Below, piece by piece: positions 3,108 to 15,045 of a DNA stretch of 15,045 nucleotides. Every line of letters starts with the position of its first letter. Position 1 is the first letter of the stretch. Made by a program: the position numbers and the translations under genes. The DNA is taken from NCBI GenBank assembly GCA_033442325.1, contig JAWQFM010000036.1:222841-237885 (forward strand), given 5' to 3'. The notes under the pieces are model-generated. The model did no database searches, was not told where the DNA came from, and saw only the letters and a program-made list of their open reading frames with translations. This DNA comes from Salpingoeca rosetta (taxonomy: Eukaryota > Protista > Choanoflagellata).

Positions 3108-3373
3108 TCAGTAGCCTTCGTTGGAGAAGGTGATTGTGTATTCGGGGAAGCGCTGTTTCAGGATATCGACGGTAGTTTGGTGGTTCGCGCGTCCAAACGC
3201 CTACATCAGCAGCGGCGGCGACGGCAGTCGAGGAAGCATTAGGTGTGCGGGGACACAGGTACATATGAGATATGAGATGGCAGCGCACAAAGACGTTGGT
3301 GCGCACCACGGCGGTTTTGCGAACACCAGTAAAGCTTACACACAGTTGACATCCGTACCTGCCACTCGCATCA

Positions 3374-3452
<79 letters not shown>

Positions 3453-4082
3453 GCACACACACGCACACACATGTACACACACACACACTCTCTCTCTCTC
3501 TATCTCTCTCTCACCACTGAGTATCCGTAGACGAGGATGCTGCCCTCGTCCTTGTCCACTTCGATGCGCCCCCCGCCCTGCTGCTCACAATCGAATCCAT
3601 GCGCCATCGCCTCCGGCGTCACCCTGTCCAGTACATCCTCTGCCTCGCAATCATGTGCGTGTGTATGTGTTTTGGATGAGAAGGGTGAGCTGCTGCCGAG
3701 CATCGCAACTTGATGGCTGTGGCCGAATAGCAACAACACAGGCAACCATGGCAGGACGGGATTTGTACGAGGTCCGCACATTTTCGCATTGGCTTGTCGC
3801 GCAGAGACATGAAAGTGTACAGCAACACGTGCGCGCAACATATACAAACACACACGTACACACACGAACACACATGCACTACACACACGAACACACTCTC
3901 TCACGCACTCCAACACACACACCCAAACACACTCCAACACACACCCAAACACTGGACTCACGGTGGTACTCGCAGTCAGCGTAGCCCCGAACAAGCGTAT
4001 CGGACTCCCCCGTCTTGGGGTTGGTCACTCGCACCAGCACATACTTGAACGTGCCATGCTCCTCAATGTCGACCGGCTCCAT
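3108..4082 (-). CDS. PHPT1: 14 kDa phosphohistidine phosphatase (Janus/Ocnus family), 112 aa
   Basis: Minus-strand exons 4082-3962, 3639-3515, 3200-3108 give MEPVDIEEHGTFKYVLVRVTNPKTGESDTLVRGYADCEYHQDVLDRVTPEAMAHGFDCEQQGGGRIEVDKDEGSILVYGYSVAFGRANHQTTVDILKQRFPEYTITFSNEGY*. Hallmark motifs VDI..G.FKYVL, VRGY..EYH (catalytic His), GGGRI, VYGYS, G.A.H and terminal N.GY are all present. Confidence 0.96.
3375..3512. repeat. (CA)n followed by (CT)n microsatellite in PHPT1 intron 2
   Basis: Directly visible; reads (GA)n then (TG)n on the sense strand. Confidence 0.93.
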
Positions 4083-4550
4083 GATTGTTGTGGTTGTTGT
4101 TGTGCAGGCAGGATGACAGCGTTTGTGTCATGTCATCACAACATGTCACAATTCAACGTCAGTGCCAGATACTACACTTCGTCCTGTCCAATACCGTCTA
4201 CCCTGCACGATCAAAACACGTCAAGCACGAAATGAGGAGTGACCGTTGCGACGTTTATGTGAAATCTTTAACTAATGTTCCTCTTGCCGTCAAAGTCAAG
4301 TTTGCCGTTGCACCATCCCATATCGCACGCATCAACCGCACCGCGCAGCAGCTCGGGTTCCGCTCCAAGGAGGCGCACGCAGCGAGATCACACGCCCCAG
4401 TCGCTTGCCGGCACTGCCCAGAGCCCCACACAACCCCTGAAGCCCGCCAAGTGCACCCGCAACCGCATCAGTCGCTCTCGACCGCGCCGAAAACGGCCAA
4501 CGCAGCGCCAGGTGCCAAAGTCATCTTTACCTTTGGCTTCTGCCCAACGC

Positions 4551-5270: not shown

Positions 5271-6320
5271 ATGCAGATGATGAACACGGGCACACCTGGC
5301 GGCGCGCGACGCGCCAGTCACTCGCAAGATGGGCGCCCGCCAGCCAAGAAGGCCCGACGCAAGCGGTTTGTGTGGAACGACACGCTCACTGCACGCGCGC
5401 TGGAGTGCTGCATCAGCCTGCGCATTCCCTGCAAGCATGGCAAGCACGGCGTCTCCACGCTGTGGGACCAGGTGGCCACGCACATCAACGAGATTACGCT
5501 GCTGCGCCCGCACCACGCGCAACACGACACAACCGCCACCGCCAACACCGGCGGTAGTGGTGGCGCCCACAACAACAACAACAACGACAACAACGTCAGC
5601 AGCAGCAGCAGCAACAACAACCATGGCGGTAGTGGCAGCGTGCCACACGCAGGCACGCCCGTGACGGAAAGCCCCAACAGCAGCACGCTGTCCAGCGCAC
5701 CGCCGCCGTCATCATCAACGCCAGGCAGCACCGCTGGTGGCGATGACAGCGTGTCAGGCGCAGCAACAGCGACACCAACGAGCACTGCACCAGCAGTCAT
5801 GCCACAAACAACGACAACGGCAACATCAGCCGCATCCGGCACGCCATCGGCAGCGGCGGTCATGACACCGGGCAGCATGCATATGGGGACATCACCCCGC
5901 ACGCTGGCAGACGTGAACCCGGAGGACCTGTTGACCGGCGACCGCGTGCGCAAACGCATCATGAGCGTGATTGATAAGGTGGCACGCACGGACCGCCTGC
6001 AGCAGCAGCACGCCCTGCAGGTTGCAGCGGAGGGCACGGCGCTGGGCCTGGCGCCTCCGGAAGAGGACTTCTTCTCGGAGGAGGTGGTGCAACTTGCACG
6101 GAGGTTCATTATGATGCGTGGCGAGGCATTCCACCTGCGTGACGAGGGTGGCAGCGGCAGCGGCGGCGGTGCTGGTGACGTGTCCATGACGTCGATGGAT
6201 TTGAGCCCGCTTCCTTCGACCAACACCAGCATAATGGGTGGTGGTGGTGGTGTTGCCGGCGCACACGCGCACATGCACGCGCCCGCCACACACGCACACG
6301 CGCACCCTTCCCCATTCCCT

Positions 6321-6389
<69 letters not shown>

Positions 6390-7640
6390 GCGTTGTTGCT
6401 GCCACCGCACTCGCACGCCCCCGTGCACGCACATGCGCACGCGCACGCACCAGCAACGTCTGCAGCAGCAGCGGCAACCGCGTCAACACCAACATCAGCA
6501 GCAGCATCAACAGCAATGACAGTGACATCTGCAGCCGAGACAGCACCACCAGCAGCAACGGCCGGTGGCCATGATGGGCATGATGGTGATGGTGATGACG
6601 GTAACGGCGATGGTGGTGATGGTGGTGGTGGTGGTGGTGGCAGCGGCCGTGCGAGTCCAATGGAAGAACGAGGCAATAACAGCACAGGTGATGAGGGGAG
6701 AGCGCAGGACGCAGCTGCAGCCGCCACACACCACCAAGCCACAGCCGCAACCAGCAACACCGCCAACAGCACCGCCAACAGCAGCAACGGCGATGATGGC
6801 AGCACCAGCAGCAGCGGTGGTGATGGGATGATGAATACGGGTCGCGTTGCGCGCGGCAGCCGGGTGAGTTGTCGTTTGCATTGTTGTGTCTGTGATTGGG
6901 GGGGGGGAAGTGGGTGGGTGGTGGTGTTGACACGTGCGTATGTGTTTGTGTTGTTTTATCAAAGAAGCGCACGCACACAATCACACACACATACACACAC
7001 ACACACTAACACACACACACACACACACTAACACACACACACACACGAACACACACACGCACTCACTGCCTCTCACCAGGGGTCGGCTGGGCGGCGCGCG
7101 GCACGGGCACAGGGGCTGCCAACACCAGCACCAGCGACAATGGCGATGGCGAGTGCAATGGGGCAGGAGGCGCTGCAACACGACCGCCTCACGTCTCTCC
7201 TCTACAACGCCGTCAACCGCCTGCTCGACAAGTGAGTTGCGTCATCACGTCAGGCTGTGTCGCGGTGTGTGTGTCTGTGTGTCTGTGTGTCTGTGTGTCT
7301 GTGTGTCTGTGTGTGCGTGTGTGTGTGTTTTATGCTTGAGTTTCATTGCTGTTTGCTTCAATCTCGAACCCCCAACTCGTCTCATGCACAACCCCCTCCG
7401 CCCCCCCCCCCCACACACATCTACTCAACACCCTCCCTTCCCTCCCCTCCCCTCCATTGTCTCTGCGTGCACAGGTTTGATTCGCTTGAGGCGCGGCTGG
7501 GGGACGTGCAGCGCGTGGTGAAGCAGCAGGAGGAGATGCAGAAGGTGATGGTGAACTTGGACGCGTTCATGTCGCACGCCATGATGGCACAGCAGACGAC
7601 CCACCACCAGCACCAGCACCACCACCAGCAGCAGCAGCAG

Positions 7641-10324: not shown

Positions 10325-11118
10325 ATGCCGCGTGCAACAAACACACGCGCGGCTTGGCTTTCGGCCTGCGTGCTCCTCTTTACCCTCGTTGCCTCTTGGC
10401 AACAGCCCATCGTCAACGCCGTGAGTGCCACCGCCTCACTGCATGCGCTTCGTCTTTGTGTTCTCTACCTCTCTGCTTCTCTGCTTCTCCTTTGTTCCTC
10501 TGCTCCTCCTTCTCAGCAAGACAAGCACGCGAAGAAGCATCTCCACCAACAGCCTGCTCACCATTGTTCCATTCACGCGTGCTGCCTGACAGGAGGTTTC
10601 CCTTGGCGATGCTCTGACCGCGTCGGAATTCCTTGATGAGCTGGTGCGTGCATGTGCTCGCTTCCTCGCTTCCTCGCTTGCTTTCTTGCTTGTATGCATG
10701 GTGGTGGCACGAGCTGTCCATCACCCAGAGCGAGCGGGCAATGCCTTGCCGTCCGTGGCGCTGTCGCCCTTGTGTTTAAAGAAAGCTCGGTTCTCAACAA
10801 CGCATATCCCTCATCCGACCACCCCCCTCCCCATCTCACCCTTCACCCTTCTTCTTCGAATGCAAAATCGCTCCACAGGCCCTCAACGACTGCGCCCAAC
10901 TGACTGACTCCAACTCCGGGTACTACTTCACAAGCGGCCAGGAAACAGGCGTCTCTCGCACACGCTGCGACACAGGTGAGGGCGCGTGCCACCGTGCGTG
11001 GCTTGCTTTGTCTTCTCCTTTGTGACGTGAAGGAGTGTTGCTGCCCTCTTCAGCCTGTTTGCCTCTCTCTGCTTCATTTATTGTGACTGATGACGGATTT
11101 GCCTGCATGCAACCCCCC

Positions 11119-11156
<38 letters not shown>

Positions 11157-14100
11157 GTTCCTGCCAGTGCCGTCGTTTCAGCGAGTGCAGCGATGGATGT
11201 AAGTCGGTCTTCAACTGGCTGTGTTTCATGCGTGCATGCATGCACATACGCTGAGAGCATTGGCGAGCGCATGCAAGGGATGGCTGGCCGCTTAGCTCCG
11301 CGTGCCCCCCTTCCGCTCCCCCCACACATCGTGCTCACAACTGAATGAACTTCCCTGTCCACCCCACATTGGCATTATCATCATCATCTAGCTTGCCTTG
11401 GCATCAACCGCTGCACCGACAGCACCGGCACCGGCTGCAAGGCCATCGCCAACTGCACCCAGACCGTCTTTGAGACCACATTCGAGGTGCGATTGTCGCG
11501 GACAGTCACCGCGCTGTGTTGCTTCACAAGGCCTCACCTTACGTGCGTTGGTTGGTGTGGGACAAGTCATAACCCTTTCCTTCCCAATGTCTCACCACTT
11601 TTCCGTGATTGTGTGCCCGATGTCCCATTCCATCTCCTCAGGTTGTCGTTGACTGCCGCGAGCCGCTTGATGAGCGCGATGAGGCCGGTATCGACTTCTT
11701 TGGCATGCGCTGGAAGCAGGCCCTCGCTGAGGACTGCAGCATTGGACGCGTGAGTTGCTCACGCGCCTGTGTCTATGTTGTGTGATTGTGTTGAGTTTGT
11801 GTGTACGCGTCTGCGTGTGTGCTTTGGTGTGTGCAGTTGTTTTCCGTATCAATACTGATCGCTCGCTTGGTCGTTACCACCTTTGTTTGCGTCCTCCCTT
11901 CATTGTCATTGCCTCACACACTCATCCCCCTTTGCGCCTCTTTCATATCCACAGGTGTGCCGCTACAATGGCGACAGCGCAGCCACGATTGAGGTCATCA
12001 ACAGCACCACCTTCCGCACCACCACCCTCAACCCAGCGCACGTGGACCACCTCACCTTCTGCGCACAGACGCAAACCTTCAAGTTCAACCGCTGTGAAGT
12101 CCTGAGCGTGCGCTTGATCCCAGACACAACAACAACGACAACAACCACAACGACGACCACTACTACTACCACCACCACGACCACGACGACAACCACCACA
12201 ACTACAACGACAACGACGACCACGACCACAACAACTACGACAACCACCCTCCCACCCTGCTCCTACAACTGTGAGGACGAGTTTGACAACTGCGTCGGCG
12301 TGGTAAGACAGCCAACAGTGTGCCGTTGTTTGCGTGTCTACCTATGTATGCGGGCATGAATGTTGTGTGTTTGCTGCGTGGCGTAGCTTGCTCGCCTGCA
12401 TGCACCTGTTGCCCATTGGCCTCGAACCACAACGCTCATTTGGCGCCTCGCTCACTCCGCCTTCTCACCACCACCACCACCACGCCCACTTTAACGCCAA
12501 CAGGCCATGTTCAGCGCCAACGTTCGCGACACCTTCACGGACTGCGTTGCGGCCACGGATCACTACAGCATCTCAAACCTGATTGACTTTGGCATCTGCG
12601 TTGGCGAGTGCGACGAAATCTCAAGCTCAAGCAACCTCACCCAGATGCAGGCCGTGCTCGAGTGCTAGTGAGTTGGCTGTGGTGCTGCGTGCGCGTGCAT
12701 TCGCGTTGCTGCTGCCTGATTGCACACAAACCACTTTGTTGTGCCGTGTTCACTCGCTTCATGTGCTCGCGTGTGCTTCGCCGCGAACCTGCTTCCGGCA
12801 TCGCCCTCCCACACCATCTTACCCACACATGCATGCACGCCACCAACAGCGTGAACTGCGCCAACGACACGGCGGACATTGGCTGCGAGGTGACCACCAC
12901 CACTACGACAACCACGACCACAACCACCCTTCCCTACGACTTGCTGGATGAAGTCAGCGACTACGCCACATTTGTCTCCAACCAGGTGTGTCACTCTCGC
13001 TGTGATTGCGCCCAGGCAAACGTGTTACGGTGCATTGCAGTCTATGTGCATGTCTGTGCATGATGTGCATTCGTGCTCTGTTGTGTGTGACGCTTATTCC
13101 CGCTGTTGTCCCCCACTCACTACTCACCATCACATACTCACGTACCCGTCATGTACTCCCCTTCATTCTCACCTTGTCCGTGGTTAGACGCGCGCTGGCT
13201 GCACGCGTTCCGTGTTGTCGACCAACGGCTACTACCTCCTCTCTGGCGCAGCTTCTGGCGTGCAGCAAGCCGAGTGTGACCGCGGTGGCGGCTGCAGCTG
13301 CTTCCACTTTGAGGAATGCAACGACCCCGAGGGTGAGTGCCAACTTGCCTTGCTGTTGCTGCAGATAGTGCTGATTGACACTCTTCTGTACTTGCGTACG
13401 TGATGTGTGTTCAAGTAACTGCTTGCAAGCAAAGTAACTCGCCCACTAATGTCGTTGCTGCAGTTGTTTTGCTGATCACTCAATCACTCACAAACATGGC
13501 TTTCGCATCTACCATGTACATCCTGTTTCGGATGTGTCACAATGCAGGCATGACATGCATGGAGGTGTACGAGTGCGAGACCAAGAGCGGCAGCGCCGAC
13601 AGCTGCTACACCTTTGACGAGTGCGTGGAGGATGACTTCCACATTGAGGCCATCATGGCAGTGTCGTGCAACGATAGCCAGCTGCTGGAGACCTTCAACA
13701 ACACCATGCTGGACGACTTTGCTGCCGACCTCAAGGCATCGCTTATCGAGGACTGCAGCGACCTTCCTCTGGTGCGTTTGTGATTGTGAGAACGGCTGTT
13801 GTTGCGCTTTTGCGCTGCTGTGTGGCACCAATGCTGGCTTGCTTGGTGCATGGTGTTGCTTTCGCTACATTGAACTGACGTTGTTTTCCCTTGCTTCCTG
13901 TTACGTCCACCACCCAACGCACGCGTGTACAGCAATGCCATGTCAAGTCTGATGATTACACGGACATTGAGGTTCTGGACAACAGCACCTTTGTCATCGG
14001 CGTCTACAAGCCAAACGTGAGTTGAGCTTGCCTTAATGTGATGTGGGCTGAGATCTTTGTCGTTTGTGGCATGGTATTTGCACTGTACAACCGTTCCACG

Positions 14101-14856
14101 AGCCTCCTACAGCTCACGAACACATGCTCACGAACACACACACACACACGCACACACTACCACTACCACACTGGCAAACACGAACAGGACATTGCCCGCC
14201 TTTCGAGCTGCGCGGAGCTGAGCTCCTTCACCTTCCACGGTTGCACCGTCGAGCTGGTGGAGCGATATGATGCGGAGGCGCAGGTCATTGTGACGCAGCG
14301 GTTTGTGGTGACGGGCGTCAACGAGTCCCAGGTCAACACCACCGCCATCAAGCAGCGGCTGTTGGCCAAGCTGCCGCAGTTCACTGCCGACCAGATTGAG
14401 GTGCGCATTGAACGGATCAGCCGTCGTGCAACGAACGATGGCTTCATTGTTGTCATCGAGTACACCGCCGATGACGAGGATGCTGAGGAGGTGGTGAACA
14501 CCGCCAACGAGGTGGCAAACAACGGCACCCTCACTGAGGCGATCGAGGAAGACACGGGCGAAATGGTGGATACGATGCAGGAAGGCGATGTCATGATTGA
14601 CTTGGTCACCACTACCACTACGACGACTACTACTACTACTACCACAACAACGACGACGACTACCACAACGACAACTACGACTACGACAACTACGACTACG
14701 ACAACTACGACTACGACAACCACGACTACGACAACTACGACTACGACAACCACCACAACGACAACTACGACTACGACAACCACCACAACGACTACGACGA
14801 CTACGACTACGACAACAACAACAACTACTACCACCACTACTACTACTACGACGACA

Positions 14857-14894
<38 letters not shown>

Positions 14895-15045
14895 CACTAC
14901 CACCACTACCACAACCACAACCACAACCACCACTACTACGACTACTACGACGACGACTACCACCACTACCACAACCACTACGACGACGACGACTACTACG
15001 ACTACACCACACTACAACGACACTACCACTACAACGACGACCACA
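10325..15045 (+). CDS. Secreted/cell-surface mucin-like glycoprotein with duplicated Cys-rich domain, SEA-like domain and poly-Thr tracts; 3'-truncated (>=817 aa)
   Basis: 13 phase-consistent GT-AG exons: 10325-10420, 10593-10643, 10879-10975, 11154-11198, 11392-11486, 11642-11749, 11955-12302, 12504-12667, 12850-12985, 13188-13332, 13548-13771, 13933-14016, 14188->15045. No in-frame stop. Exon 1 is a signal peptide (MPRATNTRAAWLSACVLLFTLVASWQQPIVNA). Many N-X-S/T sequons. The internal duplication independently supports the exon joins. Confidence 0.88.
12126..12248 (+). repeat. Coding poly-Thr tract (41 Thr, mixed ACN codons)
   Basis: In frame within exon 11955-12302; a second 12-Thr tract lies at 12893-12928. 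Confidence 0.93.
14608..15045 (+). repeat. Coding poly-Thr tract (133 uninterrupted Thr, then PHYND, then Thr to window end)
   Basis: ACN codons in frame with exon 14188; includes tandem 15-nt units ACAACTACGACTACG from ~14671. Confidence 0.93.

What the first reader, a model, noticed from the sequence alone, without database searches (positions are those of the whole stretch)
10325..15045. Hidden 13-exon secreted mucin-like protein: candidate extracellular-matrix/glycocalyx component
Seen architecture: signal peptide - 14-Cys domain A1 - Thr41 - 9-Cys module - Thr12 - 14-Cys domain A2 - SEA-like domain with RISRR - Thr133+. Established: alternating Cys-rich and Thr-rich O-glycosylated segments plus SEA domains typify animal mucins, and the S. 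rosetta rosette protein Rosetteless is secreted with S/T tracts and internal repeats. No C-type lectin motif is visible here, so this appears to be a different protein. Inference: an undescribed mucin-like ECM, theca or adhesion protein in a unicellular animal relative.
Basis: partly seen in the sequence, partly recalled or inferred. Interest (0 to 1): 0.75.

Follow-up and report, generated by a model that had tools for sequence, protein, structure and literature searches.

The report
Orphan-domain choanoflagellate mucin-like gene, gap-truncated
This is a real, spliced gene of the choanoflagellate Salpingoeca rosetta for a secreted, threonine-rich (mucin-like) glycoprotein built from cysteine-rich domains that no database recognises. 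It is one member of a gene family seen so far only in this species, and its end is lost in an assembly gap.

Summary
Thirteen exons with canonical GT-AG introns give an open 817-codon frame: signal peptide, 14-Cys domain A1, Thr41, 9-Cys module, Thr12, 14-Cys domain A2, a ~110-aa alpha/beta module containing RISRR, then Thr133+. Paralogs support the model: exons are conserved without indels, introns diverge, and dN/dS is 0.12.

- The gene is not complete. The window stops at a 2,575-N gap.
- It is not unique. At least six S. rosetta loci share the exon2-A-Thr-exon8 cassette.
- A near-identical paralog runs on into two beta-propellers with no membrane helix.
- A more distant paralog ends in a membrane helix and a cytoplasmic tail.
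- The "SEA-like" module is predicted to have a ferredoxin-like fold, with a conserved Arg-Arg in its central loop. It fails the Pfam SEA model, lacks the G/SVVV self-cleavage motif and does not match SEA above generic ferredoxin folds.

No Pfam family matches any exon. No credible relative of the module exists among 1.84 billion representative proteins. Only one exon each of the A domain and the 9-Cys module was searched outside this genome, so that absence is weakly tested.

This scan has already noted many poly-Thr mucin-like genes in this genome. I read this one as a surface-coat or matrix glycoprotein of unknown role: moderately interesting, not surprising.

The parts
10325..10420 (+). Exon 1: start codon and signal peptide (32 aa; the exon ends at the likely cleavage site ...IVNA)
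   Evidence: The C24 paralog has an equivalent signal-peptide exon ending ...TATA just before a GT donor.
10593..10643 (+). Exon 2: 17-aa linker exon (EVSLGDALTASEFLDEL)
   Evidence: Canonical splice sites. The C24 paralog has an exon of the same 51-nt length and phase. 62-80% aa identity at four other loci.
10879..12125 (+). Domain A1: 14-Cys, 172 aa, encoded by exons 3-6 and the first 57 codons of exon 7 (exons 10879-10975, 11154-11198, 11392-11486, 11642-11749, 11955-12125)
   Evidence: Colinear homologs lie at C24, C29 (two loci), C28 and C27. No Pfam match.
12126..12248 (+). Thr41 tract, a putative O-glycosylated stalk
   Evidence: Mixed ACA/ACC/ACG/ACT codons.
12249..12892 (+). 9-Cys middle module: end of exon 7 (12249-12302), exon 8 (12504-12667) and start of exon 9 (12850-12892)
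   Evidence: The 54-aa peptide of exon 8 has at least 22 matches in the genome. An alignment of 15 copies has invariant Cys and Gly columns. No Pfam match.
12893..12928 (+). Thr12 tract
12929..12985 (+). Linker LPYDLLDEVSDYATFVSNQ at the end of exon 9. It also precedes the A domain in the C36:488k paralog.
13188..14271 (+). Domain A2: 14-Cys, 179 aa, encoded by exons 10-12 and the first 28 codons of exon 13 (exons 13188-13332, 13548-13771, 13933-14016, 14188-14271)
   Evidence: Paralogs at C24, C36:488k and C15. Two intron positions are shared with A1.
14272..14607 (+). Module of ~112 aa with a ferredoxin-like (SEA-type topology) fold. A conserved Arg-Arg sits in the loop between strands 2 and 3 (ERISRRATNDG-FIVVIEY).
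   Evidence: Alignment A1. AlphaFold model with block-mean pLDDT 76-91 over residues 31-140. Fold searches. No Pfam SEA match.
14608..15045 (+). Thr133 tract, then PHYND, then Thr8, still open at the window edge. A run of 2,575 N follows directly.

Best explanation
The locus encodes the first 817 or more residues of a secreted, heavily O-glycosylated, modular glycoprotein of Salpingoeca rosetta.

Shown:
- A 13-exon open frame with a signal peptide.
- Two copies of an unrecognised 14-Cys domain and a 9-Cys module.
- A ~110-aa module predicted to be ferredoxin-like.
- Three poly-Thr tracts.
- Purifying selection on the coding sequence.
- Membership of a family that recombines the same exon-coded modules in this genome.

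Inferred:
- The poly-Thr tracts are O-glycosylated, stiff spacers. They hold the disulfide-rich globular heads away from the cell or space them within the matrix, as in mucins.
- The protein is part of the cell coat or extracellular matrix.
- The missing 3' part most likely resembles that of the 89%-identical C24 paralog: a Thr tract, a PQQ/SBBP-like beta-propeller, a DUF6923-like beta-propeller and no membrane helix. That would make it a soluble or matrix-bound binding protein rather than an anchored one.
- The conserved Arg-Arg in the central loop of the ferredoxin-like module may be cut by a Kex2/furin-type convertase. The two halves would then stay joined through the shared beta-sheet, as in cleaved SEA-type modules.
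For: Gene model
- Canonical splice sites and an open frame.
- Exons are conserved and introns are not against the C24 paralog.
- Exons 2-8 are colinear at four more loci with 27-80% aa identity.
- The C24 paralog has matching exons 1 and 2.

Selection
- dN/dS is 0.12 against C24 (dS 0.088) and 0.30 against C15.

Secretion
- N-terminal hydrophobic core of Kyte-Doolittle 2.25, and no other hydrophobic stretch above 0.9 in the visible 817 aa.

Mucin-like tracts
- Thr41, Thr12 and Thr133+ with mixed ACN codons.

Internal duplication
- A1 and A2 align at z=24 with 14 of 14 Cys in register.

Module
- The fold has block-mean pLDDT 76-91. Arg79 and Arg80 lie in the loop between strands 70-75 and 86-95.
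- The Arg-Arg is invariant in four copies, including a 27%-identical copy inside a 7,387-codon Ser/Thr-rich open frame on C18.

Likely 3' end
- 89% DNA identity to C24 up to the last base of the window.
- The C24 last exon continues into PQQ/SBBP-like and DUF6923-like propellers.

Organism
- The gene next to the C24 paralog is 100% identical to 'TKL protein kinase [Salpingoeca rosetta]'.
Against: - No transcript evidence was available, so the junctions and the single-gene status rest on sequence logic and paralog conservation.
- The 3' end is unknown. The sequence after the gap shows no similarity to C24.
- The C15 paralog ends in a membrane helix, so an anchored form is possible.
- Glycosylation, secretion and cleavage are all untested.
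- The Arg-Arg could be structural rather than a cleavage site.
- The fold model rests on a four-sequence alignment.
Confidence: 0.7

Rival explanations
1. The window gene is a type I membrane mucin. The missing 3' end would encode a short stalk, one membrane helix and a cytoplasmic tail, as in the C15 paralog. That gives the transmembrane-mucin order of Thr stalk, SEA-type module, membrane helix and tail.
For: The last exon of the C15 paralog reads module, Thr43, VVAGVTAGVSFIVCIVIVGLSYL (Kyte-Doolittle 2.58), a ~50-aa tail and a stop. After the gap only ~50 nt of open frame remain before a stop, which does not look like the C24 end.
Against: The window copy is 89% identical in DNA to C24 and only 51-71% identical in protein to C15. 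It follows C24 into the long Thr tract up to the window edge. The 2.6-kb gap is about the size of the C24 propeller region.
Confidence: 0.2
2. The exon-13 module is a true but very divergent SEA domain. Self-cleavage would have been lost (G-F-I-V-V in place of G-S-V-V-V) and replaced by convertase cleavage at the neighbouring Arg-Arg.
For: - The topology is beta-alpha-beta-beta-alpha-beta.
- DG-FIVVIEY lies exactly at the junction of the loop and strand 3, where SEA domains have G/SVVV.
- The module is flanked by Thr tracts in three gene contexts.
- Solved SEA-like domains score Z 6.2-8.0: Trop2 C-domain, PCDH15 MAD12 and CELSR1. PMC6586460 names the EpCAM/Trop2 and protocadherin-15 domains as SEA-like.
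- An ESM Atlas SEA cluster appears at rank 8, score 0.80.
- Canonical SEA next to Ser/Thr-rich tracts is already known in craspedid choanoflagellates (PMC8011033).
Against: - Pfam SEA gives no hit at E<=1 on the module, or at E<=10 over the whole genome except for one unrelated locus.
- hhalign against that canonical S. rosetta SEA gives 0.4% probability.
- Z values of 7-8 are the tool's stated background for models without a clear match. Unrelated ferredoxin-like folds rank equal or higher, and no canonical mucin SEA appears in the top 50.
- The Gly is not conserved in the C18 copy.
Confidence: 0.2
3. The 13-exon model joins two genes, or is a decaying duplicate, because the A2 block and the module travel as a separate cassette.
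For: The C36:488k and C15 paralogs carry the block of exons 9/10 to 12/13 behind different N-terminal parts. Four other loci carry only exons 2-8 in the stretches examined. There is a sharp identity break near 11451-11487, which suggests gene conversion.
Against: - The frame stays open with compatible phases across all 12 introns.
- The C24 paralog has the same full order from the signal peptide to exon 13.
- There is no second signal peptide or start context before exon 10.
- dN/dS of 0.12 argues against decay.
Confidence: 0.1

Closest known systems
Animal transmembrane mucins (MUC1/MUC16 type: Pro/Thr/Ser-rich stalk, SEA, membrane helix, tail)
   Same: Long Thr tracts flank a small alpha/beta module. 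One paralog (C15) adds a membrane helix and a tail.
   Different: No Pfam SEA match and no G/SVVV motif. The tracts are pure Thr rather than Pro/Thr/Ser repeat units. There are extra 14-Cys and 9-Cys domains. A Thr tract lies between the module and the membrane helix in the C15 paralog. The window gene's own anchor is unknown.
SEA-like modules paired with a Cys-rich neighbour domain (Notch NRR, EpCAM/Trop2), as described in PMC6586460
   Same: A disulfide-rich domain (A2) lies directly N-terminal to a ferredoxin-like module that has a basic site in a loop. Trop2 is among the top structural hits (Z 8.0, and 7.8 at rmsd 3.2 A over 96 residues).
   Different: No sequence relationship. The Z values lie within background. 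A2 is not a thyroglobulin or LNR domain. Cleavage is untested.
Rosetteless (S. rosetta secreted C-type lectin with mucin-like Ser/Thr repeats; PMC4381721, PMC6322860)
   Same: Same organism. Secreted, with Ser/Thr-rich tracts and internal repeats. A plausible matrix protein.
   Different: No C-type lectin domain in any exon. The globular domains are unrelated.
Craspedid choanoflagellate Sema-FN1 (FNIII array, canonical SEA with G/SVVV, Ser/Thr-rich tract; PMC8011033)
   Same: It shows that an SEA domain next to a mucin-like tract already exists in choanoflagellates. The single PF01390 hit in this genome carries GSVVV.
   Different: That domain is recognised by Pfam. The module here is not, and it shows no profile similarity to it.
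Other poly-Thr surface and secreted proteins of S. rosetta noted by this scan (for example the Hoglet-like cluster 44 kb downstream, and the giant membrane mucins)
   Same: Same design: a signal peptide, globular heads and poly-Thr stalks. A copy of the exon-8 module matches at C36:284313-284462, inside the stretch covered by note s1-435901.
   Different: Different terminal domains. No Hog module is visible in the window.

Membership tests
SEA domain (Pfam PF01390) | Match to the family profile at or above the gathering score | tested here: not met
   No PF01390 hit on the exon-13 peptide at E<=1. A whole-genome scan with PF01390 at E<=10 hits only C28:706292. hhalign of the module alignment against that SEA gives 0.4% probability.
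SEA domain (Pfam PF01390) | Alpha/beta sandwich with beta-alpha-beta-beta-alpha-beta order | tested here: met
   The AlphaFold model has E32-42, H51-61, E70-75, E86-95, H96-123, E128-131 and E136-139, with block-mean pLDDT 76-91. This feature is shared with many unrelated ferredoxin-like folds.
SEA domain (Pfam PF01390) | G/S[VI]VV self-cleavage motif at the turn between strands 2 and 3 | tested here: not met
   The sequence there is NDG-FIVVIEY (window, C24), SG-FIVVVEY (C15) and ED-FVLVIEI (C18). There is no Ser, Thr or Cys nucleophile.
SEA domain (Pfam PF01390) | Structural match to solved SEA domains that stands above other folds | tested here: inconclusive
   SEA-like domains of Trop2 (Z 8.0), PCDH15 MAD12 (7.1) and CELSR1 (6.2) are listed. 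Unrelated ferredoxin folds score 7-8.5, and no mucin SEA is in the top 50.
Gel-forming mucins | VWD-C8-TIL units, CysD and a C-terminal cystine knot | tested here: not met
   No Pfam family on any exon at E<=1. The 3' end is not available.
Transmembrane mucins | Long O-glycosylatable Ser/Thr-rich tract | tested here: met
   Thr41, Thr12 and Thr133+. Glycosylation itself was not tested.
Transmembrane mucins | Single membrane helix and cytoplasmic tail after the juxtamembrane module | not testable with these tools
   The 3' end lies in 2,575 N. It is present in the C15 paralog and absent from the C24 paralog.
Rosetteless-type C-type lectin matrix proteins | C-type lectin domain | tested here: not met
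   No Lectin_C or any other Pfam hit.
S. rosetta 'A domain / exon-8 module' family (defined here) | Colinear cassette of 17-aa exon, 14-Cys A domain, Thr tract and 54-aa Cys exon | tested here: met
   Present in the window and C24 and at C29:~661k, C28:~746k, C27:~728k and C29:~378k.

The most novel reading that the evidence does not exclude
The exon-13 module could be an ancient, highly divergent SEA-type domain. Its self-cleaving G/SVVV would have become G-F-I-V-V, and a conserved Arg-Arg convertase site in the same hairpin would have taken over cleavage. Together with the Cys-rich A2 domain packed against it, this would be a cleaved, force- or protease-sensitive juxta-stalk switch of the Notch-NRR/EpCAM kind, already present in a unicellular relative of animals. 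The 14-Cys A domain would be a new extracellular fold.
Probability: 0.15. Interest if true: 0.6.

Novelty: new variant of a known kind. Interest (0 to 1): 0.35.

Why it matters
Choanoflagellate cell coats and matrices control rosette formation, clumping and attachment. The glycoprotein targets of the glycosyltransferases Jumble and Couscous are still unknown (PMC6322860).

This family adds candidates: secreted or anchored Thr-stalk proteins with globular heads found only in this species so far. It also shows how such genes evolve, by shuffling exon-coded modules, segmental duplication and gene conversion. If the module proves to be a cleaved SEA-type switch, it would bear on how early that animal surface-receptor device arose.

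As it stands, this is one more of the many mucin-like genes of this genome. It has unrecognised domains, an incomplete sequence and no functional data.

Tried and rejected
- Pfam on every exon at E<=1: no family above its curated cut-off and no SEA; only sub-threshold hits (E 0.04-0.23) on exons 9 and 13.
- Pfam on the whole 1,152-aa C24 last exon: nothing, probably because of composition bias. Its sub-regions did give weak propeller hits.
- Word search with the C24 last exon, region 1-140, candidates of 634-2,016 aa: nothing.
- Word search with the exon-11 alignment, candidates of about 41-130 aa: nothing.
- Profile search of 1.84 billion representatives with the module alignment: two hits, both rejected.
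  - P0001 is a 5,042-aa chimeric animal LDLa/GPCR model that matches only the Cys-rich leader, four times over.
  - P0002 is a bacterial repeat protein that matches a 28-aa hairpin, seven times over.
- PDB sequence search with the module profile: only utrophin at E 0.67.
- ESM Atlas: the module is nearest to unnamed eukaryotic fragments (0.92), and SEA appears only at 0.80. Exon 11 gave no usable hit.
- Folding exon 11 alone: pLDDT 49, not usable.
- Metagenome scan with the exon-8 alignment: 60 pattern matches, none confirmed.
- Pfam and PDB searches on the single-exon A-like domain of the C21 locus: nothing.
- The absence of S. rosetta's own proteins among the module hits is unexplained. The reference proteome is in the word-search database. 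These genes may be unannotated, modelled without this exon, or clustered under Thr-rich representatives.
- Joined step left out: the spliced 817-aa model has no reference, so it was not sent to any search or folding tool. Exons were searched one by one by reference. Exons were joined only inside local scripts, to check the frame, count residues, align A1 with A2 and compute dN/dS.
Full report
**1. Place and organism**

The window is G000:C36:222841-237885 of a 55.4-Mb, 68-contig eukaryotic genome. A control word search with the gene next to a paralog returned a 100% identical 'TKL protein kinase [Salpingoeca rosetta]' (P0003).

**2. The gene model**

Reading the sequence and scripting the splice sites gave 13 exons, from 10325-10420 through to 14188-15045. 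All introns are GT...AG. The phases are compatible and the frame is open for 817 codons with 38 Cys.

Exon 1 encodes a typical signal peptide: two Arg, then AAWLSACVLLFTLVA (Kyte-Doolittle 2.25), ending ...IVNA at the exon boundary.

- A1: aa 50-221, 14 Cys.
- Thr41.
- A 9-Cys module.
- Thr12.
- A2: aa 381-559, 14 Cys.
- A ~112-aa module containing RISRR.
- Thr133, then PHYND, then Thr8 at the window edge.

A1 and A2 are 30% identical (52 of 171), with all 14 Cys aligned. The z-score is 24 against shuffles, or 17 with the Cys held fixed. Reading that alignment against the exon boundaries, they share two intron positions: SDG|SC with PEG|MTC, both phase 1, and IGR|VC with LPL|QC, both phase 0. 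This is an old internal duplication.

**3. Independent support from paralogs**

A DNA search of the genome found a copy on C24 that is 89% identical over window 11451-15045, introns included.

Measured exon by exon against C24:
- Exons 6-13 are 94.5-100% identical; the only indel lies in the poly-Thr tract of exon 7.
- Introns 5-12 are 84-95% identical, and nearly all carry indels.
- Exons 3-5 are 62-70% identical, while the introns there no longer align.
- There is a conversion-like identity break near 11451-11487.

The C24 gene has its own signal-peptide exon and a 51-nt exon 2 of the same length and phase. dN/dS is 0.12 against C24 (dS 0.088, 482 codons) and 0.30 against the C15 paralog. 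The Thr runs use all four ACN codons, so the selected feature is the amino acid rather than a microsatellite. The gene is real and under purifying selection.

**4. The 3' end is missing**

Bases right after the window are 2,575 N. I cannot tell whether this is a true assembly gap or a withheld stretch. After it only about 50 nt of open frame remain, and nothing there resembles C24.

Paralogs show two possible ends:
- C24. Its last exon continues after the Thr tract into a region with weak PQQ / PQQ_2 / SBBP beta-propeller matches. A Thr/Ser linker follows, then a DUF6923-like six-blade repeat, then another Thr tract and one more blade. There is no hydrophobic helix; the best 19-residue window is 1.5. 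The DUF6923-like part has more than 60 copies in the genome.
- C15. This paralog is 51-71% identical in protein. It ends with the module, Thr43, a membrane helix (Kyte-Doolittle 2.58), a ~50-aa tail and a stop. More than 640 Thr codons lie upstream of its A domain.

A third copy at C36:~488k carries exons 9 (partial) to 12 behind a different N-terminal region.

**5. A wider family**

- The N-terminal peptide of the A domain (exon 10) and the 54-aa peptide of exon 8 have about 11 and 22 matches in the genome.
- Fifteen exon-8 copies align with invariant Cys14, Gly30, Cys32 and Cys36.
- At C29:~661k, C28:~746k, C27:~728k and C29:~378k, exons 2, 3, 5, 6, 7 (with its Thr tract) and 8 recur in order at 27-80% identity. 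The cassette is therefore shared by at least six genes.
- At C21:~1171k a signal peptide is followed by an A-like domain encoded without introns, and then by an (ST)n tract.

**6. The 'SEA-like' module**

Four copies (window, C24, C15, and a 27%-identical copy lying between Ser/Thr tracts inside a 7,387-codon open frame on C18) align with 28 invariant positions, including Arg79-Arg80-Ala81.

AlphaFold on this alignment gives a disordered leader, which is the end of A2 lacking its partner exons. It then gives beta(32-42), alpha(51-61), beta(70-75), a loop (76-85, ISRRATNDG), beta(86-95), alpha(96-123) and beta(128-131, 136-139), with block-mean pLDDT 76-91. This is a ferredoxin-like sandwich, the fold type of SEA and SEA-like domains (PMC6586460).

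Membership of the SEA family fails on several tests:
- Pfam SEA does not match.
- The genome's one canonical SEA (C28, with GSVVV) shows no profile similarity.
- The nucleophile position is Phe.
- Foldseek and VIA rank generic ferredoxin-like folds first: 1j27 at Z 8.5, then eIF2-alpha and HMG-CoA reductase domains.
- The SEA-like domains of Trop2 (Z 8.0), PCDH15 MAD12 (7.1) and CELSR1 (6.2) fall within what the tool states as background.

Two leads remain. G-F-I-V-V sits exactly where SEA has G/SVVV, and the conserved Arg-Arg lies in the same hairpin loop.

**7. Relatives elsewhere**

- No Pfam family matches any exon above its cut-off.
- No PDB sequence matches.
- The module profile found only two non-credible hits among 1.84 billion representatives.
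- Word searches and a metagenome scan found nothing.

The A domain and the 9-Cys module were tested only piecewise, because the spliced protein has no reference and was not sent to any search or fold tool. That joined step was left out. Absence of relatives is therefore strong for the module and weak for the A domain.

**8. What is known**

- Canonical SEA next to Ser/Thr-rich tracts is already described in craspedid choanoflagellates (PMC8011033).
- Rosetteless has mucin-like repeats (PMC4381721, PMC6322860).
- A mucin survey found no true gel-forming mucins in choanoflagellates and left mucin-like proteins open (PMC4948705).
- This scan has about 80 notes on mucin-like genes in this genome, including SEA-like modules with basic loop sites. 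The design is common here.

**9. Verdict**

This is a genuine, selected gene that is truncated by an assembly gap. It encodes a secreted mucin-like glycoprotein and belongs to a family, so far seen only in this species, of shuffled unrecognised Cys-rich modules.

The SEA label holds only as a fold type. The matrix or adhesion role is plausible but untested.

I rate it a new variant of a known kind, of moderate interest.

Noticed in passing
L015 (G000:C18:142130-145441, minus strand): A 7,387-codon open frame made mostly of Ser/Thr tracts, with repeated STESGMEPTTT units. It carries one copy of the same Arg-Arg ferredoxin-like module. It looks like a giant mucin-like gene.
   Followed up: partly
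L007:3860-7315 (G000:C24, minus strand): The last exon of the C24 paralog holds a PQQ/SBBP-like beta-propeller, unique in the genome, and a DUF6923-like propeller with more than 60 copies, many of them on contig C4.
   Followed up: partly
window 11451-11487: Identity to the C24 paralog jumps here from about 60-70% to about 90-100%. This looks like the edge of a gene-conversion or segmental-duplication tract inside the gene.
   Followed up: partly
L046:1921-3003 and 3253-4506 (G000:C21:~1170-1173k): A family member with a signal peptide and an intron-less A-like domain, followed by an (ST)n tract and a ~350-aa domain with no Pfam match. It is the best contiguous template for folding the A domain.
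   Followed up: partly
G000:C36:284301-284462, 292412-292543, 340191-340322: Copies of the exon-8 Cys module lie 46-100 kb downstream on the same contig.
   Followed up: no
L009:3938-5428 (G000:C36:~487-488k): The third paralog has a different N-terminal region: a Cys-rich part and then a stretch that looks alpha/beta. A ~130-aa Thr tract and the shared LPYDLLDEV linker follow.
   Followed up: no
window 5271-7031: The upstream gene is a long low-complexity ORF (Gln, Ser, Ala and His runs), already noted by the scan as Myb/SANT-like. About 2 kb of (AC)n-rich spacer separates it from the mucin-like gene.
   Followed up: no
L027:~1423-1719 (G000:C28:706292-706501, minus strand): The only canonical Pfam SEA hit in the genome, with an intact GSVVV motif. 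It may be the Sema-FN1 SEA described in PMC8011033.
   Followed up: partly
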